From positions 68,324,001 through 68,388,000 of the forward strand of contig NC_042998.1 in assembly GCF_006345805.1 (NCBI RefSeq): a stretch of 64,000 nucleotides of DNA, in the 5' to 3' direction. Below are positions 1,201 through 46,227 of this stretch, piece after piece. Below the pieces are notes generated by a model. The model worked only from the letters and a program-made list of their open reading frames with translations, had not been told where the DNA came from and made no database searches. The position numbers and the translations under genes were made by a program. This DNA comes from Octopus sinensis. Its lineage: Eukaryota. Positions within the stretch are counted from its first letter, which is position 1. Every line of letters begins with the position of its first letter.

Positions 1201-1418
1201 ATCAAAACTACTTCATTCCACAAATTCAATTCCTTCTTTTCTTGCTATATCTTTTATGTCTTACTTGCTTTGGTCATTAGAATGCAGCCATGCTGGGGCT
1301 CTGCCTTGAAGAATTTAGTTGAAGGATCGACCTCTGTGCTTATTTCTATTTAAGCCTAGTATATATATAATATATATAGACGCAAAATTCTAGTGAGTAG
1401 GATCCCAGAAAAACAGGG

Positions 1419-1490
1419 TCTCACTGAAGAATTCTCCCTGGGCAAATAAATTATCTTTATTGCTGAAAAGAAAGAAACTGCAGTCTGAGA
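1419..1490 (+). ncRNA. Type I hammerhead ribozyme, array copy 1
   Basis: Stem I TCTCA/TGAGA; core CTGAAGA 1424-1430; extended stem II; GAAA 1474-1477; palindromic stem III ACTGCAGT; GTC cleavage triplet (cut after 1485). Confidence 0.85.
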
Positions 1491-1816
1491 ATTTACCGGT
1501 TTAGTAAATGTTTTTATCTTCATTTCACTTAATTTATCAAGCTTCTGTATTCCTAGCACATATTTCGCCTTAATGTACTGATATATGAAAAATATATGGC
1601 TTGTGTTAGTAATACCAGCGATTATAATTATTTTTATTTTATCGCAATTTGATTTGTTTACATATTTCTCGATATAATTATGAGCGCCAGGCGATATACC
1701 AGAATTCCCTAGTGTTGTCGGGACGTTCGGAGTCTGCGCAGTGATATGATTAGTTAGGAAGAGTAAATCATTAGACGCACATGCTTCTAGTGAGTTAGGA
1801 TCCCAGAAAAACAGGG

Positions 1817-1887
1817 TCTCACTGAAGAATTCTCCCTGGGCAAATAAATTATCTTATTGCTGAAAAGAAAGAAACTGCAGTCTGAGA
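1817..1887 (+). ncRNA. Type I hammerhead ribozyme, array copy 2
   Basis: Same elements as copy 1; predicted cut after 1882. Confidence 0.85.
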
Positions 1888-2218
1888 ATTTACCGGTTAG
1901 TAAATGTTTTTATCTTCATTTCACTTAATTTATCAAGCTTCTGTATTCCTAGCACATATTTCGCCTTAATGTACTGATATATGAAAAATATATGGCTTGT
2001 GTTAGTAATACCAGCGATTATAATTATTTTTAATTTATCGCAATTTGATTTGTTTACATATTTCTCGATAAATTATGAGCGCCAGGCGATATACCAGAAT
2101 TCCCTAGTGTTGTCGGGACGTTCGGAGTCTGCGCAGTGCGCAGTGATATGATTAGTTAGGAAGAGTAAATCATTAGACGCACATGCTTCTAGTGAGTTAT
2201 GATCCCAGAAAAACAGGG

Positions 2219-2290
2219 TCTCACTGAAGAATTCTCCCTGGGCCAATAAATTATCTTTATTGCTGAAAAGAAAGAAACTGCAGTCTGAGA
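2219..2290 (+). ncRNA. Type I hammerhead ribozyme, array copy 3
   Basis: Same elements; predicted cut after 2285. Confidence 0.85.
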
Positions 2291-2613
2291 ATTTACCGGT
2301 TTAGTAAATGTTTTTATCTTCATTTCACTTAATTTATCAAGCTTCTGTATTCCTAGCACATATTTCGCCTTAATGTACTGATATATGAAAAATATATGGC
2401 TTGTGTTAGTAATACCAGCGATTATAATTATTTTTATTTTATCGCAATTGATTTGTTTACATATTTCTCGATAAATTATGAGCGCCAGGCGATATACCAG
2501 AATTCCCTAGTGTTGTCGGGACGTTCGGAGTCTGCGCAGTGATATGATTAGTTAGGAAGAGTAAATCATTAGACGCACATGCTTCTAGTGAGTTAGGATC
2601 CCGAAAAACAGGG

Positions 2614-2684
2614 TCTCACTGAAGAATTCTCCTGGGCAAATAAATTATCTTTATTGCTGAAAAGAAAGAAACTGCAGTCTGAGA
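2614..2684 (+). ncRNA. Type I hammerhead ribozyme, array copy 4
   Basis: Same elements; predicted cut after 2679. Confidence 0.83.
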
Positions 2685-3006
2685 ATTTACCGGTTTAGTA
2701 AATTTTTTATCTTCATTTCACTTAATTTATCAAGCTTCTGTATTCCTAGCACATATTTCGCCTTAATGTACTGATATATGAAAAATATATGGCTTGTGTT
2801 AGTATACCAGCGATTATAATTATTTTTATTTTATCGCAATTTGATTTGTTTACATATTTCTCGATAAATTATGAGCGCCAGGCGATATACCAGAATTCCT
2901 AGTGTTGTCGGGACGCTCGGAGTCTGCGCAGTGATATGATTAGTTAGGAAGAGTAAATCATTAGACGCACATGCTTCTAGTGAGTTAGGATCCCAGAAAA
3001 ACAGGG

Positions 3007-3077
3007 TCTCACTGAAGAATTCTCCCTGGGCAAATAAATTATCTTTATTGCTGAAAAGAAAGAACTGCAGTCTGAGA
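3007..3077 (+). ncRNA. Type I hammerhead ribozyme, array copy 5 (GAAA reads GAA)
   Basis: One A is missing from GAAA (mutation or homopolymer read error); predicted cut after 3072. Confidence 0.7.
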
Positions 3078-3400
3078 ATTTACCGGTTTAGTAAATGTTT
3101 TTATCTTCATTCACTTAATTTATCAAGCTTCTGTATTCCTAGCACATATTTCGCCTTAATGTACTGATATATGAAAAATATATGGCTTGTGTTAGTAATA
3201 CCAGCGATTATATTATTTTTATTTTATCGCAATTTGATTTGTTTACATATTTCTCGATAAATTATGAGCGCCAGGCGATATACCAGAATTCCCTAGTGTT
3301 GTCGGGACGTTCGGAGTCTGCGCAGTGATATGATTAGTTAGGAAGAGTAAATCATTAGACGCACATGCTTCTAGTGAGTTAGGATCCCAGAAAAACAGGG

Positions 3401-3472
3401 TCTCACTGAAGAATTCTCCCTGGGCAAATAAATTATCTTTATTGCTGAAAAGAAAGAAACTGCAGTCTGAGA
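3401..3472 (+). ncRNA. Type I hammerhead ribozyme, array copy 6
   Basis: Same elements; predicted cut after 3467. Confidence 0.85.
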
Positions 3473-3654
3473 ATTTACCGTTTTAGTAAATGTTTTTATC
3501 TTCATTTCACTTAATTTATCAAGCTTCTGTATTCCTAGCACATATTTCGCCTTAATGTACTGATATATGAAAAATATATGGCTTGTGTTAGTAATACCAG
3601 CGATTATAATTATTTTTATTTTACGCAATTTGATTTGTTTATATATATATATAT

Positions 3655-3720
<66 letters not shown>

Positions 3721-3758
3721 TATATGTATATATATATATTATATATATATATATATGT

Positions 3759-3937
<179 letters not shown>

Positions 3938-3961
3938 TATATATATATACATACATACATA

Positions 3962-5341
3962 TATGCGTATAATAAGGGATGACCACTAAGTGGATATCCA
4001 ATATGCTAGAAGAAAATCATCTACGATCTAACCACAAAAAAAGAATGTTCTCTAGAGAAATTCAGCACACACCTGAATATAAGCGTGTAAGACAGATGAA
4101 AATTTTCATCTATTTTCATCGAACTTATTTATTCCGTAAATATAGCAACCAATTACAGAGAAATATGAAAGAAAAAATTAAGGAAATTAACAACTCGAAT
4201 ACGATCTTCGTTAATTCTGATAAGACAAGAAACTTATATGCACTTGATAAGGACGTTTACAAGCGTCTAATTTCGAATAGCGTCACAGACACATACAAGA
4301 AAGATAACACAAATATATACAAAGAGGTGAATTTGGAGGCAAGAAGAATAGCTAACAATCTTAAGATTAGCGATAGGATAGAATATCTTTCTTCACGACT
4401 CGCTTTTATGGCCCTGAGAGACAATAAAGCCAATTTTAATAGAAACCCCAAATGTAGATTGATCAACCTGGCTAAAACTGCAATAGGCATTATTAGCAAA
4501 TATATTTTATATCGTCAATTTCTTCGGATGAGGCAGCATTCCATAATGCTGCACCTTATTACGATAGCGCATTAAGGAATAGTGGATTTTCTGAGAAGAT
4601 CCAGTATAGCCGACTTAATGCTAGTAGTAACGCTACACGTAGAACTAGGACCAGGAAAGTTTTGTGGTTCAACCCAGCTTTTAATTTGGTCGTAAAAACA
4701 AACATAGGTAGGGAATTCTTGAAATTAGTCTCTAGGCATTTTAAACAGGATCATAAATTTTATAGAATATTTAATAGAAGAACCCTTAAGATAAGCTATT
4801 CATGTTGCAGGAACTTCACCTCTTATGTTAACCAGCACAACAGGAAATTAATTGATAATAAACATAGTGCCGATCCTCTTAAAAAAATGTAATTGCAAAG
4901 ATGGATCCTCCTGTCCGTTGGAAGGGAAATGGTTGGAAAAAGGAGTCGTATATAGAGCCAAGGTGCAAACAGAAGGCTCACCTGAATATAAGACTTATAC
5001 AAGGGCTTCTGAAAATCCTTTTAAAACCCGATTTTATTCGCACAAAAATTCCTTTCGATACCCAGAAAATAAGACGAAGACCAGCCTGGCGAAATATGTC
5101 TGGGAACTAAAAGAAAAAAGAAACTCGACCTTTCAACGTGTCATGGAGCATTCTAGATAGAGCGGCACCATAAAGGCACGGAGCACATAGGAAGAATTTC
5201 AAATGCGATCTTTGTTTATTAGAAAAATATTTCATATTATTCCAAGATATTAATTCTTTGAATCAAAGAAGCGAACTTTTGAACTCATGCAGGCACGCAA
5301 CCAAATTCAAAATGTCGAACATCAATATCCCATATGAATAG
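3962..5341 (+). mobile_element. Penelope-like element (Hydra-clade-like), internally deleted, GIY-YIG endonuclease remnant
   Basis: SDKTRNLY...YKK, AFMALRDNKANF..PKCRLINLAKTAIGIISKYIL, then ISSISSDEAAFHNAAPYYDSALRNSGF, WFNPAF, KISYSC, CNCKDGSSCPLEG, VVYRAKV, CDLCLLEK and LNQRSELLNSCRH. Frameshifted; the RT catalytic core is absent. Confidence 0.85.
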
Positions 5342-6602
5342 CATATATTTTTGTTTTTGATTTTTTTATTCTTGGACTAGTTTTTGATCACACTGTTGGA
5401 TTTGTTTCGCATTATGCAGGTTTTATTCCGCATCGCAAAGTTTTGTATATATTTTGTTTATATTTCGATATATTTTCTTAAGAAAAAACCTTCGACTTAG
5501 TTTATTTCATTTTGTCATATTGTATAAACTCACTTTGGTCATTTAATTTATAGATAATCCAATATAGGGTGTTATATTTTGCATGTCGTTTATCTAAAAT
5601 TTTTATTATTATGCACTCAGCAATTTTTTAAAAAAATAATGTTGTTTGTAAATACGTCAGATCCTAGACATGTTTTTATGTTTGTATTGGCATGCATATA
5701 TATTTCTAAGCATGCGTCTATGTATATGTGTTAGTGAGCGTGTATGTATGATGTATGTGTATGCATTCACTTGGATTTGTGTGGATGTTTTTGCATACTT
5801 GTCTCTCTCTATATATATATGTGTGTTCTTATATGTGTATTTACTGCGTACATACGCTTTTATATACACTTGTATACGTAATTTTATCTTGTGAACATTC
5901 ATTACGTATAGTCAGACTTTTTTCTTTTTTCTTTTTTCTTTTTCTTTTTTCTTTCTTCCTTTCTTTCGTTATTTTTTCTCTCCCAATTCGTTACTTTTAT
6001 AGAATCCTGTAACTTTACGCCCCCCTCCCCTTTCTTATTCACGTCTTTAGCTTCCTGTTGCTTATAAGATAGTTACCTTTCGTTTCTTCTCCCTCCCTGG
6101 GTTTTGCTCATAGTCTATATGTAAACACCAAGTGAGTTTTGCATGCGAGCAAGATTGCGTATACATATGTGCACATGTATTTGTGTGTATATTTTCGTTT
6201 TGCATTTATATGTCTGTATATGCATGTGGTCTGCGCACATCTATCTGTGTATTTTGATGTATACATGTATATTGATGGTTTAGCATGTGTATATACTGTT
6301 GTAAAATATTTTAATATATTTTAATGTATTTTAATTTCAATTTTTATGTATTAATTGTATTAATCGAATTATATTTTCTCCATAACTAATTACAATATGC
6401 ATTTGAATCAAATCTTCGATTTAAGGTTTTTCCTCGATTTTTATAATTTTACATTCAACTCATTTATTTGTTTTGTTTATTTTTGTTTATCGCTCGCATA
6501 TGACCGTTATTTGAAAGGACCAATCAAACAAATCCATATTTAAAGGTGTGTAGCTTATGCTAGTCTTGATCGAATTGTCATTTCGGTTCTATTTTAACAA
6601 AA

Positions 6603-6640
6603 CTGTCCGACGAACGGGAACGTGAAACTCCGAGTAACAG
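6603..6640 (+). ncRNA. Minimal type I hammerhead in PLE-type 3' module
   Basis: CTGT-CCGACGA-ACG GGAA CGT-GAAA-CTC C GAG-TA-ACAG. The module continues ~110 bp to (TA)n; homologues at 26406 and 36889. Confidence 0.75.
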
Positions 6641-7032
6641 CTTTTGTAAAATTTCTGCTGCTTTTAAATAAAGCATATAACTCTACCTCTGGTATTTGAA
6701 TACTCTTTTTTACCACCTTGTTTCACATTTATGTGTTTACTCCGGTATATATTTATATATATAAGTGGAACAGCCACTAAGGTGGATTTCTAGCACGCTA
6801 GAAAACGCTAAATCGCCTTAAAAATTTTTGAAAACATTTTCTTCGTGGTAAGGGGATTTGGCGTTTTCTTCTAGCATACTAGGAATCCACCTTGGTGGCT
6901 ATTCCTCTTATTTAATATATGTAATAATTCATAGTACTCGGACATTTTAAAATAAGCTAGTCACTGGTTTAAATTAATATTATTTAATAATATTAATTTC
7001 TACCCTTTTTATTTAATTCATATATATTTATA

Positions 7033-7488
7033 GGCGCTGGAGTGGCTGTGTGGTAAGTAGCTTGCTAACCAACCACATGGTTCCGGGTTCAGTCCCACTG
7101 CGTGGCATCTTGGGCAAGTGTCTTCTGCTATAGCCCCGGGCCGACCAATGCCTTGTGAGTGGATTTGGTAGACGGAAACTGAAAGAAGCCCGTCGTATAT
7201 AGGTATATATATATATATATATTATATATATAATATATATATATATATATTATATATAATATATATATATGTGTGTGTGTGTTTGTGTGTCTGTGTTTGT
7301 CCCCCTAGCATTGCTTGACAACCGATGCTGGTGTGTTTATGTCCCGTTACTTAGCAGTCGGCAAAAGAGACCGATAGAAAAAGTACTGAGCTTACAAAGA
7401 ATAAGTCCCGGGGTCGATTTGCTCGACTAAAGGCGGTGCTCCAGCATGGCACAGTCAAATTACTGAAACAAGTAAAAGAGTAAAAGAG
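7033..7488 (+). mobile_element. tRNA-derived SINE family A, full length, with internal (TA)n(TG)n
   Basis: Head GGCGCTGGAGTGGCTGTGTGGTAAG...GGGTTCAGTCCC; CORE-like CTTGGGCAAGTG; tail GTAAAAGAG repeats. Many partial copies across the window. Confidence 0.85.
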
Positions 7489-15629: not shown

Positions 15630-18600
15630 ATATATATATTTATAAAATTGAGTTTGTGTGTGTGTCTGTGTGTCAGTGTGTCTGTGTGTCAGTGAGTCTG
15701 TGTGTGTAGACATTTATGTTTTTTAGAGAAATCCACATTCAATGTCCGATTGATCTCAAATTTTATACCCATACTCCATAAGGTCAGAGCTAGGTCATGG
15801 CGAAGAAATCACCCCCGTGACCTGCACGCATGATCGGGGACATACACATAAAGTGACCTTATGTGCACGTGTGATGCTGAAGTTTTGTTCACGCTTTGAT
15901 TGCTCCGTTTTACACGTTAATGTGTTGTTTGGGGGGAAAGAGAAAAAAGGCTCATGTACAAACACGTTTTGCACCTTTAGTTACCCTTTTGGCACATTTT
16001 TTGGCCCAATAAATGAAGCACTTACCCTTTCTTTGCCAGGGATCAATGTAATGCTACCTTTAAAAAACCAGTTGCAGAACGTTTAGTCATTACATTTCCG
16101 GTAGCTTCGCCCGATAATCAGTTTTAGGTTAGACTCGGTGGTAAGACAGCTGCTAAAACATTACTTACAACTGCTAGGGCGCCCATGTTACACCCAAACG
16201 TCCTATAGCAGGGACAGGCCGCTTTCCGGCTTCCGATGGATGTCTTACCTTTCATTGCCATCTTTTTCCTTGAGGAGACCCTGGGCTACATTATACTACA
16301 GAATTACGCATTTCACATCGCGGAAAAGGCAGACTCGTATATGTAAACACACCCATACAAATATACTCACAAAAACACACATATATGTATATGTTAATTT
16401 CAATTCGTTTAAGCAGGCTTCACCCAAATAGGAGTAACAACTTGACCTCCTGCTTTCCAATGTTGCTGATCACGGCAAGAAACTAAAAAGTGGGCAGCAC
16501 TATTGAACTTCCTCCTTCATCGAAACCAAATCAAATTCTTATGAATGGCCATTGATCTCACTGGTAGTGCCCCAGCATGACCATAGCCTTTGGGCTGAAA
16601 TGCAAAGAAGAATAAAAGGAAGAGTATCATATTTTCCCTATGCATTGTGCATGAAAATTAGTTATGTGAAATCTTAATTTCTTTCTCTGAGAGTCGCTCA
16701 CAATTGCTGATCGCTTTTCTTTCTCCCGCTAACGGCCATGTTTCATTTTATTTGCAAATTTCAGTTCACGATGTACGGTCTATGGCCTACTTAAATTATC
16801 TCCCTTAAACATTTTTTTTAAGTGAGGAAAGGCTGTGCACTGAGTCAATCCCACTCACTAAGCAACAGCATCCATAATCCGAAAAGAAGAACAAGTCAAC
16901 ATCATCGGTAACCACTGAGCCGCAGGTTTTATGTCGGAGTTATCCCAGTTACCTGAGTTACCTTCTCCTAGAAGGATGCCCTAACAAAGGCTAGGAGTCC
17001 TTCACACCCAATGGTTTAACCGCGCGATCGGGTATTCAGTCTTGCACAGGCATTGCACGATAACAACATTGATTGATTGATTAAATTGATTAACTAATGC
17101 ATGATTGTTGATGGCGCTGTGAGTCTCAACTGAATGGCTGACTGTAGCCTTAAAAAGCAAAAAATCAATGATGTACCAAAAAGGTACATGAAGCCCAGTT
17201 ACAACAACAGCCGGCTATTACCGGTAAAGGTTTTAGTAGCCAATTCTGTACAAGACATTGTAGATCTTTAGCTGGGCTAAAAAGTCACATTCGATCACAG
17301 CACCAGTAACAGTTAAGCTTCGTGCAATGGCCTTACTCGATAACGAGAGGGCAGCCATAATGTACGTATGTATGAATATGTCTACATATGTACATATACA
17401 TGTATACAGACACAAACACCCATTGCGCCACGGGACGCCTTTAATACCAACAGAGTTAATACGTGAAACGTCCTATGACACTGAAGCCCTTAATAATCAA
17501 TACATCCAGCAAAATGAGCCCAAACTTCTGCCTGAGCAACAGTGGGCTTACAGTACCATCTTTGACCACATGCAGAAACGAAAAGGGGTATTGTTCTTTT
17601 CTTGATGCACCTAGAGTGACAGGAAAAAACGTTTGTTATTCAGCTTCTTACTAAAGACCGAAAAGACGTAGCCGTAGCTGTGGCCTCCTCTGGCATTGCA
17701 GCAACTTTACTGCCCGGTGGCAGGACAGCGCACTCAACCTTTAAGCTACCAATTGATTTGGCAAGGTCCGAAGTGCCTTCCTGTAACATCACCGATAGGT
17801 CTGAAAAGGGTTTGCTTCTCCGGAGTTGCTAGCTGATAGTTTGGGATGAATGCACAATGGCCCACAAGCGATCCCTCGAAGCTCTCAACACCACTCTTCA
17901 AGACATTAGAGACTGTCCCGCTACGATGGGTGGAATAACTCTCCTCCTGTCTGGCGATTTCCGACAAACGCTTCCTGTAATACTCAAGGGAACTAGGCCA
18001 GATGTAGTCAAGGCCTGCCTAAAGTCCTCCCCACTGTGGAAAAATGTTACAACATTGTCTCTCATAACAAACATGAGAGCGCGGTTTCGTGGTGACCAGA
18101 TGGCATCAGATATTGCATCTGACATATTGTTGATCGGAAACGGTGTTGTTCCGCTCGATGAAAACGGAGAACTGTCACTAACTCACCTCTGCACCACTGT
18201 CAGTAATTCCGATGATCTAGAGGCACGTTTTTCCAAATCTACAAAGGAACTACCTTGACATGAATTGGATTTCTGAAAGAGCCATTTTGGCTCCAAAAAA
18301 CAGCACAGTGGTCGCTCTCAGCGCTAAGTTGCTGCATTAGCTTCCCGGAAGGCTGCACGTGTACGGGTCAATCGATTCTGTACCCGACGACGACCAGGCA
18401 GTGAAATATCCAGTGGAGTTTCTTAATTCTCTTGCAAAGGAGAGGACGTTTTCATCCCCAGAATCCCACTCATTCCATCTGATGCAGATATTCCCTTTGC
18501 ATTTCGCCGTCTGCAGTTCCCGCTTAGACTATATTTTGCAATGTCAATCAGTAAGTCACAGGGGCAGACACTATCGGTGGCAGGGCTGCATTTAGATGAA

Positions 18601-25490: not shown

Positions 25491-25846
25491 TCTATACAGA
25501 CATATATGCATATATTTATGAATATATTATATATATATATATAATATATATATTATAATATATACATAAAATATATATATATATATATATCAAAGTGAGG
25601 ATAAAATTCTTTTCGAAAAAAATATTTTCTCGAAAACAATTTTATCAATGGCCAGCATATTAAAAAATACCTTTAACGGTTAAATTTATAAACAATTCAT
25701 AAATGAGGGCAAAGGAAAAAAATTCTAATGCCAAATATGCCGAAAAGTTGGACATATTGTCCATTAACCATATAATTTTTTCACAATACGCACGCTACTC
25801 GAAAGAAGGCTGACAGAAATTTCTAAAAAATTCCCATTATTACCAT

Positions 25847-25897
25847 ATCGGACCGATTTCAGAGTTAGCTACTAAGGGCCCTCTCTTCGTCAGTGAT
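25847..25897 (-). ncRNA. Type I hammerhead motif
   Basis: ATCA-CTGACGA-AGAG..CTCT-GAAA-TCGG-TC-CGAT, with an A.C mismatch at the first stem I pair. Confidence 0.65.
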
Positions 25898-26062
25898 ACA
25901 TGTGGCAAAAGAAATAAATGAGATACTTACTCGCACCCATGGAAGAAGCAAATACTAAATCATGGGCACAACTAAGTACCCCAAATACATCCAAAATAGA
26001 AATACTCCAGCCCATTCGAGGCACGTGCGATTTGAACTGAGGCTTCACATATATATATTATA

Positions 26063-26197
<135 letters not shown>

Positions 26198-26405
26198 TAA
26201 TATATAATATATATACATATATGATATATATATATATATATACATAGTATATATATATCTATATATATTATACATATTATAATATATATACATATATATA
26301 TATATATACATATATACATATATATACATATATATATATATATATACATATATACATATATATATATTTATATAAAATCGTTATTTCGGTTCTATTTTAA
26401 CTAAA

Positions 26406-26443
26406 CTGTCCGATGAACGGGAACGTGAAACTCTGAGTAACAG
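26406..26443 (+). ncRNA. Minimal type I hammerhead (family of 6603)
   Basis: CTGT-CCGATGA-ACG GGAA CGT-GAAA-CTC T GAG-TA-ACAG. Confidence 0.75.
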
Positions 26444-27063
26444 CTTTTGTTATATTTTCTGATGCTTTTAAATAAAGCATATTACTCTACCACTGGTATT
26501 TGAGTACTCTTGTTTCCACCTTGTTTCACATTTATGTGCTTACTCCGGTGTATATATATATATATAAGAGGGATGACCACTAAGTGGACATCCATATGCT
26601 AGAAGTCGACCCTTATGGTCTTACCACTAAGAAATGAATGTTCTCAAGAAAATTTAGCAAACGCCAGAACGTAAGTGAGCAAGACAAGTGAAAACCTTAG
26701 CGGGTCGACTTCTAGCATATCGATGTCCACTTAGTGGTCATCCTCTTATATATATGTAATACAATTTTTCTGAATCTTCCGATTTTTCTATATGCTAGAC
26801 CACTGGTTTTAAATTGATATTAATCAAATTAATATTCAACTTTTCACCCATTATTTTAAATCTAAATTTAACTAACTATGTTCTCTGACCGGCAAAATTC
26901 ACTGCAGAGAATTATTTTCTGCAGAATTATTTCCGGTATTTTGGCGCGCCAAAACGAAAACTTTTGAAATGTAACCCCAAATGTAAATGGTAGAACTATA
27001 TACATGTTCAATCTCATGCGGACGTCTCGTGTATAGTTCTTCAAATTATATTTTGCTATGACG

Positions 27064-27135
27064 ATCACACTGATGAGTTGCGAACATTCTACGTAAGTGA
27101 TTACGTAAGTAGTAACAACGAAACTGGTTTGTGAT
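27064..27135 (+). ncRNA. Type I hammerhead, apparently intact
   Basis: ATCACA-CTGATGA-GTTG..(TACGTAA/TTACGTA hairpin)..CAAC-GAAA-CTGG-TT-TGTGAT. Confidence 0.8.
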
Positions 27136-27401
27136 TAATCTTTATATTTTGTATCTTTTCATTTGTCTTGCTCGCTTATGTTCTGGCGTTTGCTAAATTT
27201 TCTTGAGAACATTCCTTTCTTAGTGGTAAGACCATGGGGGTGGGGGTGACTTCTAGCACATGGATGTCCACTTAGTGGTCATCCTTCTTATATATATAAA
27301 TGTAACACATTTTTTCTGAATCTTCATATTTTTCGATATGCTAGACCACTGGTTTTAAATTGATTTTGATCAAATTAATATTCAATTTTTCACCCTAATT
27401 A

Positions 27402-35935: not shown

Positions 35936-36888
35936 TACATACGTTTTTTTGTGGATATATTGGTTTAAATATAAATTCCATTATTAAAGTTTATATTCAA
36001 TAGTTACGGACCTACGTTGTTTTATTCCCATGTCGTAAGCGACTGATGTTTGTTTGAGAGTTAAAATGATATGCCATTCCGCTGGTTCAGATTTAGTTCG
36101 TTTTAATTATGTTTTCATGTTTTAAGTTCGTTTGTGAATATTCTCATTACGATGTCGGTTTTTAGTTAATTTCATGTTATCTATTTTCTTTTACATAAAA
36201 ATTTTTGATTAAATATATCTTCCACATTTGATGTATATATTTAATAGATTTTGGTCTACATTGGCTTATTCCCAAGTCGTGTTGCTCTAAGATGATTGAA
36301 GCTTTAAAACGATATGTAATTCCGCTAGGTCAGTATGTTTAGTTCGTTCTAATTATGTTTTCGTGTTTTATATATGTTATAAATTGTCTTTAACGCTATC
36401 GACGTCACAGAGTTGACTGGTACTGCCCCTGTGTCGAAACCGTAATGATATCTGTTAGATCGTTGTTGATAATGGATGCATACATTTTCAGTGCTTATTT
36501 ATTGTGAACATTTTGTATCTTGTGTTCTGGTACTAACTCATCTAGCATTAAAATTCTAATTCTTAGAGTTAAACTTATTTAGGTGTTTCTAGTTTATGTC
36601 AGTTTTGTTGCCCTATATGCGTGTGCATGTATGCATAAATTCCATCCAAGGATCATTATTCTTATTACTGTATTTATCGCACATTATATCGACACAGCTC
36701 ACTGTGACCGCAAACAACTGGTATCATCAGTTGGCATCTTTGGGTTGTAACCGGTAGAATAAAATAAGAGCTTTTAAATGCATATTCAAAACGCTCCCAA
36801 TACAGGAACTTAACGGATATATATATATATATACTTTATTTAAAGCCGTTCATCAGACAGTTCATCAGACAGTTTTTGCTAGCAAAAA

Positions 36889-36926
36889 CTGTCTGATGAA
36901 CGGCAACGAGAAACTCAGAGTAACAG
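36889..36926 (+). ncRNA. Minimal type I hammerhead (family of 6603)
   Basis: CTGT-CTGATGA-ACG GCAA CGA-GAAA-CTC A GAG-TA-ACAG; the stem II closing pair is mismatched. Confidence 0.7.
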
Positions 36927-38793
36927 ATTTTGTTGAATTTTCTGCTGCTTTAAATAAAGCATATTACTCTACCACTGGTATTTGAGTACTCTTTTTTCCA
37001 CCTTGTTTCCCATTTATGTGTTTAATCCGGTATATATATACAGAGAGAGAGAATGACTTTAAAACACCAATGATCTACTTATAACTGTTATTATTGCTCC
37101 ATTTCATATCTTTCTTTATATATATTAAACCACGGTTTTACCTTTTAAATTACCTACTACCGTATACCTTATGTAAAGGACCATACATTCTGGGGCAATG
37201 CACTAGGATTGCCTTTGGATACATCTATCCCTTAGATGGTTACATTACCTCTAACATATCTTACACAATATATACATACATATATATATATATATATTTA
37301 TATAGTCCACACATGAGATCCAGGGATTCTCTGAATAGAAGACAGCAGTAGTAAAAAAAATTCAAACTGAGCCTCCGAAGTCTTTACAGGGGATTGATTT
37401 CACAGAGTAAAGAGTGGCTGTAAGAGGGACGAAGTTGAGTGGATGCAGAGGCAATTATGCAGAGAAACACATCAGATATATTAAATATAAGATATTAGTT
37501 AGGGCATGAAGCACAAAATATGTACATAAATATATGTGAAAAACGAGAGAAAGCAAAAGTGTGGAGACTTTAAGTATAGATATACTGATATTTATTTATA
37601 TTAATAGCTCCAACTTACACAGAGTTCAAACGACATAGAAAATCAAAGGGGTGAAAGAAAGGTGTTACAAATTCAACAGCTGTTTCTGTGGGTTTGGAGA
37701 TCCATTATAATGTTGGTAGATGTAATTCATTTCGATATGCGGTTATAATGGATATAATCAACAAAGGATAAGACGCGCCCCCCACCCATTTAATTTTCTC
37801 TGTCGTTTCTATTCTGTGTCATTTGGATCTATTAATATAAATATCAATTTTTTTTTATGTCTTGCAAACAACTTGCTCATGCAAGTGCAACCAGTTAAAA
37901 TCTCCGTATACCGGAAGCTAGCAAGTGTATGGGGGGTCACCATATTTTGCTTTCCCTCGTTTTTCATGTATATATAAATACATTTTTGTGTTTCATGCAC
38001 AAACTATAATATATATTATTCTTTTGTTCTTATCTTCTTTTACTTGTTTCAGCCATTTGACTGCGGCCATGCTGGAGCACCGCCTTTAGTCGAACAAGCC
38101 TAATACTTATTTCATCGGTCTCTTTGACCGAACCGCGAAGTTACAGGGAGGTAAACACACCAACATCGGTTGTCAAGCGATGATGGGGGGGCATGTATAA
38201 TAAATTGTTTACATGCCTGCGCTAATATGCATGCTATGCATTATACAACAAAATTGTATACTTACAAAACGGTCCCGATAAAGGAAGTTAGCTCATCAAA
38301 TCATTAGTACATCATGGCTACGCTACCCTCTCCCACACACCCCACCTCTACCCCCAACCTCTGCCTACCCACAAACCCCACCTCTACCCCTACCCTCTGC
38401 CTACCCACATACCCCAACCCTCAGCCTAACCCACACCCCACCTGTGCTTCCCCACTCTCGCCTCCCCCACCTCCAAACAACATCACACCACACCACACTA
38501 CACCATACCACACTACACATCACAACACACCACCCACATACCAGCACTGACCAATTCCCATCCCCACATTTCACACCTACACATACACACACGCACACGT
38601 CAAGACCACCAGAACCTCTTTCACACGCACATACGTACTCTCTTATACACACCTTCGTTTTGGGGGTCATCTTTACTTTGCTATCTCCTCTACTTCTTCG
38701 ATCGCCTGTGTGACCCTTCTGTCCGGCAGTCGCCATGATAGATCGGTAGCCACTACACACATTTTTTTTCTCTCCTTGTTTCTTTCTGTGTTC

Positions 38794-41250: not shown

Positions 41251-41960
41251 CCAGATGCGTGCCTGCATGTATCTGTGGATGAGTACTGCGCATGGCTGTA
41301 TTGTAAATATCGGTGAATCTGCGTTATACGTGCATAAGCGCATGCGTATACTACTACAAGTTTATAAGCATCGGCATGTTAACTCTTCTTAGTGCAGGAA
41401 CCACAAAGTGAATGTTAGATGATGTGAACCAACAACAGCAACAACAACTTGTAAAAGTTTATTAAAGAATTTAATAACGGATGTCTTCATAAATCACTTG
41501 AAATTAGTATTTCTTTCTTGTTTTTTCACAAATCATAAACTGATAAATCTATCAACACTATTGAGACTGATAAAAGACAGAGTTTTAGTTGTTTTTTGTT
41601 TGTTTGTTTTTTTGTTTTTGTTTTTTTTTTTTACTTTTCCTCTTTTTTCTTGGTTTATACGATTTTCTATTTTCTTTCGTTGCTGCTGTTTGTTAGTCTT
41701 CTTAGCTGTTGTTATTTTCGTATTTTTTTTTTTGGTTTTTTTTTTGCAATATTCAGTTTTGTTATTTATCTTTAAGAATTTTATTTTCTTCTTTTGCGGT
41801 GCTGAATTGATGTTTTCTACGGTTGGGGCAGGTAGAGAGGTTTTCTTTCTACATTAATTTTAAACTTCCGATTGAGGTACCAACACGGACGTACAGCAAG
41901 TTTTAGTTTCTATTTTCAGTCTGAGACAGAATGACATGGTGGTGGTGGTGGTGTGGTGGT

Positions 41961-42060
41961 NNNNNNNNNNNNNNNNNNNNNNNNNNNNNNNNNNNNNNNN
42001 NNNNNNNNNNNNNNNNNNNNNNNNNNNNNNNNNNNNNNNNNNNNNNNNNNNNNNNNNNNN
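41961..42060. other. Assembly gap (100 N)
   Basis: Run of N. Confidence 1.
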
Positions 42061-42375
42061 TGTCGGCTGTATATCTACTCCTCGTTTCGAGCATTCAATG
42101 ACAATATGAGACTTTGAAAGGCAGATGCTACCGCGAGCCAAATTAAAATTTGGGATTTGTAGAGTAGATAGACAGTCGACAACTGATGACGGGTCGTTCT
42201 TTATGTTACTTGTCTTGTTTTCCATTTGCTTCTCTCGTTGTTTACGTTTTGTGACGCCCTCTACCCACAGGTATGTATATGCATACATGTAGATATATAT
42301 ATATGCATATATATGTATATATATTATTTATATTATGATTTGATTGAACACCACGCATCCATTTCCAAGTAAGTT

Positions 42376-43607: not shown

Positions 43608-44942
43608 TAGATAGATAGAAGATAGATAATAGATTTCTTTATTGGCCACGCAGGGCTGAACACAGGAGGGACAAAATACATAGTGGAGCTTTTCTTTTTG
43701 GGAAGAAGAGAAGGGGGAAAAAGGGTAGAATTCCGATCAAAAGGGATCGTGAAAGTAAAAAAAAGTGGGGCCGATCAATAGGGATCGTGTATCACAGAAA
43801 TGTCAATGTAAAAATGGAAAACAGATTAGGTTTGGCCGTGGATAGAAAAGCCTTATTATTATTATTCGTTTCCTTTCCTATAATTTTTCAACGTGCGGAT
43901 AACACAACCCCACCATTTACTGATATATATATATATATTAATAATAATATATTAGGGAATAAATCCAAACTTACAGGGAAAAATCAGATTTAGGATTGAA
44001 TCCAATTTTATAGTAAAATATTATATTATATCAAATTAGAGATAAAACCATTATTAGGCAAATCAAACAATGAAAAACTTAAGCCAATACATAAAATTAA
44101 TTAATTTATATTATTTTAAATATATATCAAAAGTATTAAAAGATTAATAAAAGATAATGATTAAAACACTACGATCCTTTCATGGCTGAATATACAGCCA
44201 ATTCGAGTTATGGTTACAGTCAATCTTCAGGTGATTGAAATATATATTACATACGACGGGTTTCTTTCATTTCCCGTCTACCAAATCAGCTCACAAGGCT
44301 TTGATCGGTCCGAGGCTTTAGTGGAAGAGACTTGCCCAAGGTGCCACGCAGTGGGACTGAACCTGGAACCATGTGGTTGGGAAGCAAGCTTCTTACCACA
44401 CAGCAGAGGAACTTACCTTTGTTACTATTTTTGACTTTTCTGTCCCAAATAACAATGTCGGGATTGTTTTCACTTGGAAGAAGTTTTCATGGTAATGTAT
44501 GTATGTATATTGTTGCCAAAACAACGTAACTTTCTGTCGACATTTATCCCGTCATCAAGTAACGGACCCAAACGCTGCGTCATCATTCTATTTTAACAAA
44601 CAGGTAACCTGGTGGCAGCAATCTCTTCACCGAATACGTTCGGTTGTTGGTAGCTTCTCTGTGAGAGGCTCTTCCACCCTTAGGAAGATCTTAATCCTAG
44701 CCCTGCTGCGCGCCACTCATCATCCATGCTTAGTAAAGTTAGTGTTATTGGCAATTTAGTCGCCAAATGCCTTACTGTGAGACAAGCTGCATTTAGCTCT
44801 ACTCTGCCAGAAATAAATAAAACGATAATCTCACCATATTCCCTCAACGACAATGTAGATTTTCTTCTTTCCATTTGACGGGTGTTTTTATGGAAGTATT
44901 GGATCAACACAAGCCTCTGAGAAGTTCCACTAAAACTAAATA

Positions 44943-46227
44943 TAAGGTCATCCCATAAGTTCTGTCCGAATTTTCAATAAAGAAAACAATAAATCAAATG
45001 TTATATTTAATTGAAATTTAATCATCAATGCACTTTCCCTGATTATCTATGACTTCCTTCCATCTTTTTACAAGCTTTGTAATCCCATCGATGTAAAACT
45101 CTTTTGGTTTCAAAGCGAAGAACTCTAAAATGTCAGTTTCAACCTCCTCCTGGCTTGCGAAAGTTATGTCCCCCAAATGATTCTGTAAACTACGAAACAA
45201 ATGGTAGTCTGAAAGAGCAAGGTCGGGAGAATAAGGTGGATAAGGAATTTTTTCCCAACCAAGCTCTTCGATCTTCTGTGATGTGATCTTTGCAGTGTGG
45301 GGTCACGTATTGTCCTGATAAAACATTACCCCTTTACGATTCACTAAAGCGGGTTTTTTTTTTCAAAGCTTGGTTCAAACGCTCTAGGTGCTGACAGTAG
45401 ACTTGAGCAGTGATTGTTGCATTAGGTGGTAACAATTCAAAGTGAATTACACCTTTGCAATCCCACCAGATAGAAAGAAGAAGCTTTTTTCCCATGAAGT
45501 TCCCTTCTCGGTTGTGGTTGAACTTTCTCCCTTTTACCAAGTCACTGTTTACGACGTTTAACATTTCGATAGAAGATCCATTTTTCGTCACAGTCACAAG
45601 TCTATCCAAATAGTGTGAAATTAGTTCGCGAGAATGGAGAGAAGAATAGATGTCAACTCGGGATTTGCGGTTGCTTTCGGACAATTCATGAGGCACCCAT
45701 TTTCCAAGTTTAGGAACCTTTCCAAGTTGTTGAAGATGACGATGAACAGTTGTATGGTTTGAACTAAGCTTTATTGCCAATTCTTCAACTGATAATGCAG
45801 GATTTTCTTCAGGCAATGCCTCAAGGTGCTTATCATCAAACTCAACTGGACGTTCTGTTTGAGCTTCATCATCAAGGCTGAAATCTCCACTTCTGAATTT
45901 TACAAACCATCTTCTGCAAGTTCTGTCATTCAAGCATTCTTTTCCGTAAACTTAGTGTATGTTTTGAGTCGCTTCAGCTGCAGAGTTTCCTTGTTTGTAC
46001 TCGTAAAGCATTATGTGCCTCAAATGCTCTTTGGATACTTCCATGTTAGAAAGGTTTTAATCAAAGAAATTTTAATTCTATTATTCTGTAAAATAATATT
46101 TAATTAGTTTAAATGTACACAAATGCATAAAAATAATTTTTAATTCCATCAGACATTCTAAAATACTATTAAATTTCATTCAATTTTAAAAAAGGTAAAA
46201 TCGGACAGAACTTATGGGATGACCTGA
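44943..46227 (-). mobile_element. Full-length mariner transposon (1285 bp)
   Basis: 27-bp TIRs T(A/C)AGGTCATCCCATAAGTTCTGTCCGA at 44943-44969 and 46201-46227; TA target duplication on both sides. Confidence 0.95.
45018..46044 (-). pseudogene. Mariner transposase, disrupted
   Basis: MEVSKEHLRHIMLYEYKQG, WVPHEL, LVNRKGV.F.QDN and YSPDLA(L)SDYHLF, with an in-frame stop and frameshifts. Confidence 0.93.

What the first reader, a model, noticed from the sequence alone, without database searches (positions are those of the whole stretch)
1377..3640. Young retrozyme-like array: ~397-nt units each carrying a self-cleaving hammerhead
Seen: what looks like a satellite has, in every unit, TCTCA-CTGAAGA-[stem II]-GAAA-CTGCAG-TC-TGAGA. 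This is a type I hammerhead with the CUGANGA/GAAA core, a 5-bp stem I and a GUC site. Predicted cuts fall after 1485, 1882, 2285, 2679, 3072 and 3467, giving monomers of 397, 403, 394, 393 and 395 nt. Established: tandem repeats of a few hundred nt with one type I HHR per unit define non-LTR retrozymes (newt satellite 2, schistosome Sm-alpha, cave cricket pDo500, mussel and coral circRNAs); they are cut to monomers and circularised. Inference: this is a cephalopod retrozyme family templating a ~397-nt circRNA. I know of no description of this sequence but could not search.
Basis: partly seen in the sequence, partly recalled or inferred. Interest (0 to 1): 0.95.

Follow-up and report, generated by a model that had tools for sequence, protein, structure and literature searches.

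The report
Tandem hammerhead-ribozyme retroelement in a TA microsatellite
A 2.3-kb block of nearly identical ~397-base repeats, each carrying a small hammerhead (self-cutting RNA) motif, is most likely a recent insertion of a non-coding "retrozyme" copied by a Penelope-like retrotransposon; this is a new example of a known kind of element.

Summary
Window 1377-3646 (+) is a head-to-tail array of 5.7 copies of a ~397-nt unit, 97-99% alike. The motif UCUCA-CUGAAGA-[43 nt]-GAA-ACUGCAGU-C-UGAGA is exact in 5 of 6 units. The sixth lacks one A of GAAA. The predicted cut sites and monomer lengths are correct.

The motif is not a textbook hammerhead. Rfam finds nothing, the base of helix II is an A.A mismatch, helix II is 43 nt long, and the lowest-energy fold is a different structure.

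It does have the build of hammerheads from Penelope-like elements (PLEs):
- It has a mismatch at the base of helix II and an 8-nt palindromic helix III.
- A covariance model built only from hammerheads beside external PLE genes finds all five intact array motifs (17.5-17.8 bits, E about 0.04).
- The same model finds clear PLE hammerheads elsewhere in the window.
- A chance motif of this kind is expected about 0.03-0.07 times per 64 kb.
- The array sits in a (TA)n microsatellite, a published PLE target, next to an RT-deleted PLE.

Verdict: a young non-LTR retrozyme, meaning a non-autonomous PLE derivative. Self-cleavage, the ~397-nt circular RNA and the cephalopod origin remain untested. It is a new member of a known kind.

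The parts
1377..3646 (+). Tandem array of 5.7 head-to-tail copies of a ~397-nt non-coding unit (34.5% G+C). It starts at unit position 287 and ends at unit position 180, counted from the predicted cut site.
   Evidence: TRF; BLAST and MAFFT of units; base composition
1419..1490 (+). Hammerhead motif 1, predicted cut after C1485: UCUCA / CUGAAGA / 43-nt helix II / GAA / ACUGCAGU / C / UGAGA
   Evidence: covariance model R1 17.5 bits, E 0.045
1817..1887 (+). Hammerhead motif 2, predicted cut after C1882. One T is missing in the distal hairpin of helix II.
   Evidence: R1 17.6 bits
2219..2290 (+). Hammerhead motif 3, predicted cut after C2285. It has an A-to-C change in the helix II internal loop.
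   Evidence: R1 17.5 bits
2614..2684 (+). Hammerhead motif 4, predicted cut after C2679. One C is missing in the helix II internal loop.
   Evidence: R1 17.8 bits
3007..3077 (+). Hammerhead motif 5, defective. GAAAC reads GAAC (one A missing), so the G12-A13-A14/A15.1 register is broken. The nominal cut is after C3072. This may be a homopolymer assembly error.
   Evidence: not matched
3401..3472 (+). Hammerhead motif 6, predicted cut after C3467
   Evidence: R1 17.5 bits
1360..1379 (.). Short TA tract at the left junction (tatatatataatatatatag). The first partial unit is scrambled for about 8 nt just inside the junction.
   Evidence: compared with the unit consensus
3640..3964 (.). (TA)~165 microsatellite at the right junction. 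The array breaks off inside ...GTTTA|CATAT... of the unit, where the unit itself reads like TA repeat.
3966..6762 (+). Neighbouring Penelope-like element, same strand, frameshifted, and lacking the RT palm (P0001 residues ~214-440, including YRDD). It keeps the N-terminal DKT/NPKCRLIN region and the C-terminal GIY-YIG-like endonuclease with CCHH. It is context and a candidate relative of the mobilising machinery, not part of the array.
6602..6641 (+). The neighbouring PLE's own hammerhead, now a relic (core CCGACGA, U4 changed to C), with helix III ACUCCGAGU
   Evidence: R1 27.4 bits, E 1.2e-4

Best explanation
The array is one recent insertion of a multimeric cDNA of a small non-coding retroelement: a non-LTR retrozyme, that is, a non-autonomous derivative or parasite of Penelope-like elements. 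Each ~397-nt unit encodes on the + strand a minimal type I hammerhead of the PLE kind. The motif has these parts:
- helix I of 5 bp (UCUCA/UGAGA);
- the core CUGAAGA...GAA;
- an A.A mismatch at the base of helix II;
- helix II with a 4-bp proximal stem (UUCU/AGAA), an internal loop and an 8-bp distal hairpin;
- helix III of only 2 bp closed by a palindromic tetraloop, so that ACUGCAGU is an 8-nt palindrome;
- a GUC cleavage triplet.

Proposed cycle, inferred from published retrozyme and PLE work:
1. The array is transcribed as an oligomer.
2. Two neighbouring motifs pair through the palindromic helix III into a double hammerhead, and each unit is cut after GUC.
3. The 397-nt monomers, with 5'-OH and 2',3'-cyclic phosphate ends, are closed into circles by a host RtcB-type ligase. 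A competing helix (GAAUUCUC with GAGAAUUU) keeps the monomer's ribozyme switched off.
4. A PLE reverse transcriptase/GIY-YIG endonuclease nicks AT-rich (TA)n DNA, starts copying at an internal site of the RNA, and runs several times round the circle or along an oligomer. This yields the 5.7-unit tandem seen here.

Shown here: the array, the motif, its rarity by chance, its likeness to PLE hammerheads, and the (TA)n and PLE context. Inferred: transcription, cleavage, circularisation and mobilisation in trans.
For: 1. The array and motif are real.
2. The chance expectation for such a motif is 0.03-0.07 per 64 kb, about 2-5e-4 per unit.
3. External relatives of the neighbouring PLE protein (E down to 9e-126) carry hammerheads next to their ORFs. 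Most of those found by my descriptor (6 of 8) have a U.U mismatch at the base of helix II and all have a short, palindrome-like helix III, for example ACUCGAGU in L002. The array motif has A.A and ACUGCAGU.
4. Model R1, built only from those eight external hammerheads, scores the five intact array motifs at 17.5-17.8 bits, E about 0.04 over the whole window. It also finds an intact PLE hammerhead at 36888-36927 (32.2 bits) that has the same A.A mismatch.
5. The PLE hammerhead class shows compensatory changes in all three helices: 89.5% of cells paired and 0 of 500 shuffles as good.
6. Three further hammerhead-like motifs with long helix II (26-43 nt) lie in short elements in or beside TA tracts in the same window.
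7. The array lies within (TA)n. TA tracts cover only about 5% of the window. (TA)n is a published PLE target (PMC8557442), and PLE endonuclease prefers AT-rich DNA and starts RT internally (PMC11167929).
8. Unit size, low G+C, tandem layout and lack of coding capacity fit published non-LTR retrozymes. These include mussel repeats of 350-390 bp, and an axolotl hammerhead with a mismatch at the base of helix II and a 2-bp helix III plus tetraloop (PMC7229834).
9. In a two-copy cofold, the 8-bp ACUGCAGU x ACUGCAGU helix forms in the lowest-energy structure.
Against: - No Rfam hammerhead model matches, even at E <= 10. The same was true for the other descriptor-passing candidate that was searched this way, at 25846-25893, so this test lacks power for such variants.
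- There is an A.A mismatch where most hammerheads have G10.1-C11.1, and helix II is unusually long at 43 nt.
- The hammerhead fold of a single motif is about 8 kcal/mol worse than the lowest-energy fold (-6.7 against -14.6). The explicit double hammerhead (-30.1) is 10 kcal/mol worse than the best dimer fold.
- The circular monomer is no more structured than shuffled sequence (z = -0.32), whereas retrozyme circles are described as highly self-paired.
- The R1 E-value (about 0.04) is only marginal, and calibration was shortened.
- Within the array the motif is no better conserved than the rest: about 0.9% against about 0.8-1% differences. This has no power at this age.
- No second locus or other species copy could be found.
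- PLE minimal hammerheads cleave poorly in vitro (PMC4209133).
Confidence: 0.75

Rival explanations
1. This is an ordinary local tandem repeat (minisatellite-like, grown by unequal exchange) whose unit happens to contain a hammerhead-like string. There is no ribozyme and no RNA intermediate.
For: Rfam is negative. The helix II base is non-canonical (A.A) and helix II is 43 nt long. The lowest-energy fold is not a hammerhead. The circular fold shows no excess structure. There is only one locus in 64 kb, and no copies were found in any accessible collection.
Against: The chance of the motif in one unit is about 2-5e-4. An independent PLE-hammerhead model recovers it. The same odd features (mismatch at the helix II base, 8-nt palindromic helix III) recur in genuine PLE hammerheads, including one in this window. 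The array starts and ends at arbitrary internal unit positions inside a TA tract, like an insertion. The window holds several other hammerhead-bearing short elements in TA tracts.
Confidence: 0.1
2. The array is a piece of an autonomous PLE: a multimerised pseudo-LTR/terminal region of a PLE family whose ORF lies elsewhere. It would not be an independent non-coding retrozyme lineage that lives as a circular RNA.
For: PLEs insert as partial tandems with hammerheads in their pseudo-LTRs (PMC8557442, PMC4209133). An external PLE relative forms a perfect 2.4-kb tandem with one hammerhead per unit (L004). A PLE ORF lies 320 bp downstream on the same strand, behind the same (TA)n tract. In this PLE family a short TA tract sits between the hammerhead region and the ORF start (6745-6762, 26551-26566).
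Against: The unit has no detectable similarity to the neighbouring PLE or to any other sequence in the window. That PLE has its own, different hammerhead region at 6602-6641. A 397-nt period with a complete hammerhead per period and no ORF is the published definition of a non-LTR retrozyme. The two readings differ mainly in whether a free circular RNA stage exists.
Confidence: 0.1
3. This is a genuine retrozyme-derived insertion whose ribozyme is already dead. The motif would be a relic, and the array is neither cut nor circularised.
For: One unit has a broken core. A strong competing helix and weak helices II and III are present. Other PLE hammerheads in the window are relics with mutated cores (6602, 26405). 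PLE minimal hammerheads show low activity in vitro (PMC4209133).
Against: Five of six cores are intact. The copies differ by only a few substitutions in 2.26 kb, so the source element was active very recently with this same sequence. Most differences look like homopolymer sequencing errors.
Confidence: 0.05

Closest known systems
Non-LTR retrozymes of invertebrates, especially the Mytilus galloprovincialis repeats (Cervera & de la Pena 2020, PMC7229834)
   Same: Both are tandem non-coding repeats of a few hundred bp (mussel 350-390 bp, here 393-403 bp) with low G+C. Both have one type I hammerhead per unit, lack the classical loop 1-loop 2 contacts, and have a 2-bp helix III with a tetraloop. 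Both co-exist with PLEs in the genome. In some mussel circles the predicted fold also blocks the hammerhead.
   Different: No sequence similarity was tested or expected. Here helix II is 43 nt long with an A.A mismatch at its base. Expression, cleavage rate and circles are unknown, and only one locus has been seen.
Minimal hammerheads of Penelope-like elements (Cervera & de la Pena 2014, PMC4209133), including those found here beside PLE ORFs in L001-L013
   Same: Both have the core CUGANGA...GAA, a 4-5-bp helix I, an extra or mismatched nucleotide between A9 and helix II, a short palindromic helix III implying a dimeric active form, and (TA)n or AT-rich insertion sites. A covariance model of these hammerheads recovers the array motif.
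   Different: The array unit carries no RT/EN ORF. The mismatch is A.A rather than U.U, although A.A also occurs in the window's PLE hammerhead at 36888. Loop 2 is replaced by a 33-nt insert with its own hairpin, and scores are well below true PLE hammerheads (17.5 against 27-53 bits).
Axolotl HHR_Amex2 and newt satellite 2 hammerheads (PMC7229834)
   Same: Both are tandem few-hundred-nt repeats with a weak helix III and dependence on dimer formation. Amex2 has a mismatch (U.U) at the base of helix II and a 2-bp helix III plus tetraloop.
   Different: The amphibian motifs keep short helix II and conserved loop-loop contacts, and they exist in tens of thousands of copies. None of that is shown here.

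Membership tests
Hammerhead ribozyme, type I | Conserved core C3-U4-G5-A6-N7-G8-A9 ... G12-A13-A14, an A15.1-U16.1 pair, and H17 at the cut site | tested here: met
   CUGAAGA ... GAA-A...U-C is present in 5 of 6 units. The sixth lacks one A.
Hammerhead ribozyme, type I | Three helices around the core, with helix I open and helices II and III closed | tested here: met
   Helix I has 5 Watson-Crick pairs. Helix II has a 4-bp proximal stem plus a distal hairpin. Helix III has 2 bp plus a UGCA loop.
Hammerhead ribozyme, type I | G10.1-C11.1 pair closing helix II (usual, though not universal) | tested here: not met
   The array has an A.A mismatch. PLE relatives show U.U, and the window's PLE hammerhead at 36888 shows A.A.
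Hammerhead ribozyme, type I | Match to Rfam hammerhead covariance models at the gathering score | tested here: not met
   There was no hammerhead hit at the gathering score or at E <= 10. The model also missed the second candidate at 25846-25893.
Hammerhead ribozyme, type I | Site-specific self-cleavage in Mg2+ | not testable with these tools
   This needs in vitro transcription of monomer and dimer constructs.
PLE-type minimal hammerhead | Short helix III with palindromic 15.2-16.2/loop 3, allowing a double hammerhead | tested here: met
   ACUGCAGU is an 8-nt palindrome. The 8-bp intermolecular helix appears in the dimer lowest-energy fold. Compare ACUCGAGU in L002.
PLE-type minimal hammerhead | Recognised by a model of hammerheads taken from beside PLE ORFs | tested here: inconclusive
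   R1 scores 17.5-17.8 bits, E about 0.04 per 128 kb searched, with rough calibration. The hits are lost with default filters.
PLE-type minimal hammerhead | Located in the pseudo-LTR of an element encoding RT plus GIY-YIG endonuclease | tested here: not met
   The unit has no ORF above 85 aa and no protein homologue. It has no similarity to the adjacent PLE.
Non-LTR retrozyme | Head-to-tail repeats of about 150-450 bp, G+C below 50%, with no LTR/PBS/PPT and no coding capacity | tested here: met
   The units are 393-403 bp in 5.7 copies with 34.5% G+C. PBS and PPT were not searched for. The criteria come from PMC7229834.
Non-LTR retrozyme | A type I hammerhead in every repeat (the 'active' definition of bioRxiv 10.64898/2026.07.22.740005) | tested here: inconclusive
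   Five of six are intact. The sixth has a 1-nt homopolymer deletion that may be an assembly error.
Non-LTR retrozyme | Co-existence with PLEs in the same genome | tested here: met
   An RT-deleted PLE lies at 3966-6762, and PLE hammerhead fragments lie at 6602, 26405 and 36888.
Non-LTR retrozyme | Monomer RNA predicted to be highly self-paired | tested here: not met
   The circular lowest-energy fold is -80.2 kcal/mol with 63% paired, z = -0.32 against dinucleotide shuffles.
Non-LTR retrozyme | Expressed as linear and circular monomer RNAs, and dispersed in many genomic copies | not testable with these tools
   No transcriptome or genome of the source organism is available. No other copy was found in the window or in the searched collections.

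The most novel reading that the evidence does not exclude
This genome (cephalopod-like, unverified) may harbour a lineage of retrozymes whose hammerheads carry an expanded ~43-nt helix II and a purine-purine mismatch at its base, and that are still active. The array would then be a nearly pristine product of rolling-circle or oligomer reverse transcription by a PLE enzyme, with both junctions preserved in a (TA)n target. That would make it a natural record of where PLE reverse transcription starts and stops on a retrozyme RNA, and a source of an abundant ~397-nt circular RNA in a group where none has been described.
Probability: 0.35. Interest if true: 0.55.

Novelty: new member of a known kind. 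Interest (0 to 1): 0.42.

Why it matters
If it is active, this element would extend hammerhead-bearing circular-RNA retroelements to another mollusc lineage. It would also add a hammerhead variant with a long helix II and an A.A mismatch at its base.

Its layout is useful for the open question of how animal retrozymes are mobilised. A multimer with both junctions intact sits inside a (TA)n tract beside a PLE. This fits mobilisation by PLE endonuclease/RT with internal initiation. It can be tested by surveying junctions of other copies in the source genome.

It does not change the current picture. Tandem hammerhead repeats of this size are already known in mussels, corals, amphibians and others.

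Tried and rejected
- **Rfam.** I searched the whole window at the gathering score and the region at E <= 10. There was no hammerhead or other ribozyme family, only noise hits such as STnc410 and mir-297. Rfam also missed a second, more regular candidate. I therefore treat this as low sensitivity for long-loop or minimal variants, not as refutation.
- **More copies through spurious ORFs.** A protein search with the 85-aa minus-strand ORF of the unit returned nothing. Exact look-up of the neighbouring PLE ORF returned nothing.
- **DNA pattern scans.** Both JGI metagenome scans and one viral-contig scan for the hammerhead halves returned nothing. No cephalopod or other animal genome collection is available here, so copy number and cross-copy covariation could not be measured.
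- **Thermodynamics.** The single motif does not fold as a hammerhead in the lowest-energy structure. The circular monomer has no excess stability.
- **Conservation inside the array.** The copies are too alike for the test to have power.
- **Pfam on the neighbouring ORFs and their homologues.** No RT or GIY-YIG hit passed. The PLE assignment rests on three things: homology to ~710-aa proteins that carry YRDD and a GIY-YIG-like/CCHH C-terminus as read by eye, precomputed RVT_1/HTH_animal tags on some hits, and the hammerheads next to their ORFs.
- **Second ribozyme.** I considered and rejected a ribozyme on the minus strand of the unit. The descriptor scan of both strands and Rfam found none.
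- **Source organism.** It could not be identified with the tools available.
Full report
**1. The observation**

The region is a genuine tandem array. Tandem Repeats Finder gives 1388-3646, period 393, 5.7 copies, 97% matches. BLAST of one unit against the window finds five full units (96.8-100% identity), a 5' partial unit at 1377-1485 (unit positions 287-397) and a 3' partial unit at 3468-3646 (unit positions 1-180). Nothing else in the 64 kb matches.

The string TCTCA-CTGAAGA-N43-GAAACTGCAGTC-TGAGA is exact in five units, and 100 shuffles gave none.

One correction is needed. The unit at 3007-3077 has GAAC instead of GAAAC, which breaks the core.

The units differ by only about four to six substitutions in 2.26 kb. 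The remaining differences are 1-nt deletions, 9 of 11 in homopolymer runs, plus one 7-nt duplication. The array is therefore very young or homogenised. Many differences, possibly including the broken core, look like long-read assembly errors.

**2. Is the motif more than chance?**

I wrote a hammerhead descriptor with these requirements:
- CUGANGA;
- helix II of at least 3 bp, optionally after one mismatch;
- GAAA;
- helix III of at least 2 bp;
- U-H;
- helix I of at least 4 bp.

I ran it on both strands. In order-1 and order-3 Markov sequence modelled on the window it finds 0.03-0.07 hits per 64 kb, about 2-5e-4 per 397-nt unit. In the real window it finds the array motifs and one more on the minus strand at 25893-25846.

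**3. What speaks against a textbook hammerhead**

- Rfam reports no hammerhead at the gathering score or at E <= 10.
- The pair closing helix II is an A.A mismatch.
- Helix II is 43 nt long: a 4-bp proximal stem UUCU/AGAA, an internal loop, and an 8-bp distal hairpin.
- A single motif prefers another fold (-14.6 against -6.7 kcal/mol), in which GAAUUCUC pairs with GAGAAUUU.
- The circular 397-nt monomer is no more stable than shuffled sequence (z = -0.32).

Rfam also failed on the more regular candidate at 25846-25893. Its silence is therefore weak evidence for such variants.

**4. The neighbourhood**

The array lies between a short TA tract (1360-1379) and (TA)~165 (3640-3964). Directly after that microsatellite, on the same strand, is a frameshifted ORF series. 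A reconstructed 442-aa product hits about 700-713-aa proteins with E down to 9e-126.

The best hit, P0001, has an RT motif (YRDD). Its C-terminus carries GVVYRAKV...YVG...CPLC...CLH, which I read as a GIY-YIG endonuclease with the CCHH motif. This combination is the hallmark of Penelope-like elements. That assignment rests on my knowledge of the family and on PMC8557442, because Pfam was silent.

The window copy aligns to P0001 residues 37-213 and about 440-707, so it lacks the RT palm.

**5. Hammerheads of the PLE relatives**

I fetched contigs encoding eight relatives and scanned them. Each of the seven distinct contig sequences fetched has a hammerhead beside the ORF, six by my descriptor and L008 by model R1:

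| Locus | Hammerhead |
|---|---|
| L001 | UUUGU CUGAUGA U-CG-AUGA-CG-U GAA ACUCAGAGU U ACGAA |
| L002 | ... U-CGC-CUUUGU-GCG-U GAA ACUCGAGU A ... |
| L004 | ... U-UGGU-GUAAAA-GCCA-U GAA ACACCGUGU C ... |
| L011 | ... U-CGCC-GGAA-GGCG-U GAA ACUUAAAGU A ... |
| L013 | 15-nt loop 2 |

Six of the eight have a U.U mismatch at the base of helix II. All have a short, palindrome-like helix III.

This is the minimal PLE hammerhead of Cervera & de la Pena 2014 (PMC4209133). That paper describes an extra nucleotide next to helix II, palindromic 15.2-16.2/loop 3, action as dimers and low activity in vitro. The array motif (A.A, ACUGCAGU) has the same build.

**6. An independent model test**

From the eight external hammerheads alone I built covariance model R1. 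With filters off, the window gives these hits:

| Position | Strand | Bits | E-value | Comment |
|---|---|---|---|---|
| 36888-36927 | + | 32.2 | 6.5e-6 | Intact PLE hammerhead, A.A at the helix II base |
| 26405-26444 | + | 30.3 | 2e-5 | PLE relic, U4 changed to C |
| 6602-6641 | + | 27.4 | 1.2e-4 | The neighbouring PLE's relic, U4 changed to C |
| 44235-44165 | - | 19.8 | 0.011 | Helix II 42 nt |
| Five intact array motifs | + | 17.5-17.8 | about 0.04 | |
| 27065-27134 | + | 16.2 | 0.1 | Helix II 43 nt |
| 25898-25841 | - | 12.2 | 1.1 | Helix II 26 nt |

The array score is marginal on its own and is lost with default filters. It does come from a model that never saw the window.

The PLE hammerhead class itself is well supported by compensatory changes in all helices: 89.5% of cells paired and no shuffle as good.

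**7. Insertion signature**

TA tracts cover about 5% of the window. Even so, the array and several of the other hammerhead-bearing pieces abut TA tracts (26405 and 36888 closely; 25893 and 44235 within a few hundred nt).

Published work reports (TA)n as a preferred PLE target (PMC8557442). It also reports AT-rich cleavage, with reverse transcription starting at an internal site of the RNA about 100 nt downstream of the hammerhead cut (PMC11167929).

Here the array ends 178 nt after the last cut site, inside ...GTTTA|CATAT..., where the unit resembles TA repeat. It begins at an arbitrary unit position with a short scrambled stretch. This fits one target-primed event that copied an oligomeric or circular template 5.7 times. 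Later local amplification cannot be excluded.

**8. Mechanism**

In a two-copy cofold the 8-bp ACUGCAGU x ACUGCAGU helix forms in the best structure. An explicit double hammerhead (-30.1 kcal/mol) is about as stable as two separate monomers (2 x -14.6). It is 10 kcal/mol above the best dimer fold, which uses the competing helix.

I therefore expect slow cleavage, dependent on dimers or co-transcriptional folding, and a monomer whose ribozyme is masked. Some mussel circles are described the same way (PMC7229834). Circularisation by an RtcB-type ligase and mobilisation by PLE RT are taken from that literature and are not shown here.

**9. Comparison and novelty**

Non-LTR retrozymes are defined as tandem 150-450-bp, low-G+C, non-coding repeats with a type I hammerhead per unit that co-exist with PLEs (PMC7229834). 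A 2026 preprint argues that they derive from PLE pseudo-LTRs (10.64898/2026.07.22.740005).

The array meets the structural criteria. It fails or leaves open three points: a hammerhead in all units (5 of 6), a highly self-paired circle, and everything that needs RNA or a whole genome.

Full-text searches found no paper on retrozymes or hammerheads in cephalopods or octopus beyond a PLE survey. The source organism could not be verified. I rate the element a new member of a known kind. Its variant hammerhead (long helix II, A.A) may be typical of this genome.

**10. Verdict**

The added point is that the ribozyme and the insertion both bear the marks of Penelope-like elements. Catalysis and the circular RNA remain to be shown. 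Interest is moderate.

Noticed in passing
window 36817-37045 (+): A solo PLE terminal fragment of about 215 nt lies between TA tracts. It has an intact minimal hammerhead at 36888-36927 (ACUGU CUGAUGA A-CG-GCAA-CG-A GAA ACUCAGAGU A ACAGA; 32.2 bits). Just upstream is a perfect inverted duplication (GTTCATCAGACAGTTTTTGCTAGCAAAAACTGTCTGATGAAC), which looks like a head-to-head junction.
   Followed up: partly
window 26375-27400 (+): This is a composite PLE insertion between two (TA)n tracts. It holds a hammerhead relic (26405-26444, core CCGAUGA), about 107 nt of sequence, a short TA tract, and the PLE 5' start (about 26568) followed by its inverted copy. It also holds a different hammerhead-like motif at 27065-27134 with a 43-nt helix II and a 1-bp helix III, and another inverted PLE 5' end at about 27250-27300.
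   Followed up: partly
window 43925-44240 (-): An element of about 315 nt begins exactly at a hammerhead-like motif (44235-44165; AUCAC CUGAAGA, 42-nt helix II, GAA; 19.8 bits, E 0.011). It is flanked by short TA-rich tracts and lies directly after a tRNA-like SINE copy. It may be a monomeric retrozyme-like insertion of another family.
   Followed up: partly
window 25591-26048 (-): A stretch of about 458 nt between two (TA)n tracts carries a regular-looking type I hammerhead at 25893-25846 (UAUCA CUGACGA AGAG-18 nt-CUCU GAA AUCGGUCCGAU A UGGUA). It passes my strict descriptor but scores only 12.2 bits with R1 and nothing in Rfam.
   Followed up: partly
window 6763-6910 (+): The start of the neighbouring PLE (AAGGGATGACCACTAAGTGG..., 3973) recurs at 6763 and is followed at once by its own inverted copy (6870-6910). 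This is the partial-tandem plus inverted 5' copy arrangement described for PLEs.
   Followed up: no
L004-L007 (ENA ERZ25068762 ctg134905, 17.2 kb): The contig is a perfect tandem of 2,400-bp units. Each unit has a 713-aa PLE-like ORF and one hammerhead 44 nt after the stop codon. It is either a true PLE tandem or a circular or rolling-circle assembly product.
   Followed up: no
window 7030-7195, 44250-44420 (-), 1000-1200 and elsewhere: There are many copies of a tRNA-like SINE (…GGTTCCGGGTTCAGTCCCACTGCGTGGCA…CCCGTCGTATATA), each ending in a TA-rich tail. The window also holds mariner-like (45334-45933, -) and PIF1/Helitron-like (17857-18258, +) ORF fragments. It is repeat-rich non-coding DNA with about 90 TA tracts.
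   Followed up: no
window 41990-42090 approx.: A run of 100 N (an assembly gap) lies inside the ORF listed at 41860-42288 (-).
   Followed up: no
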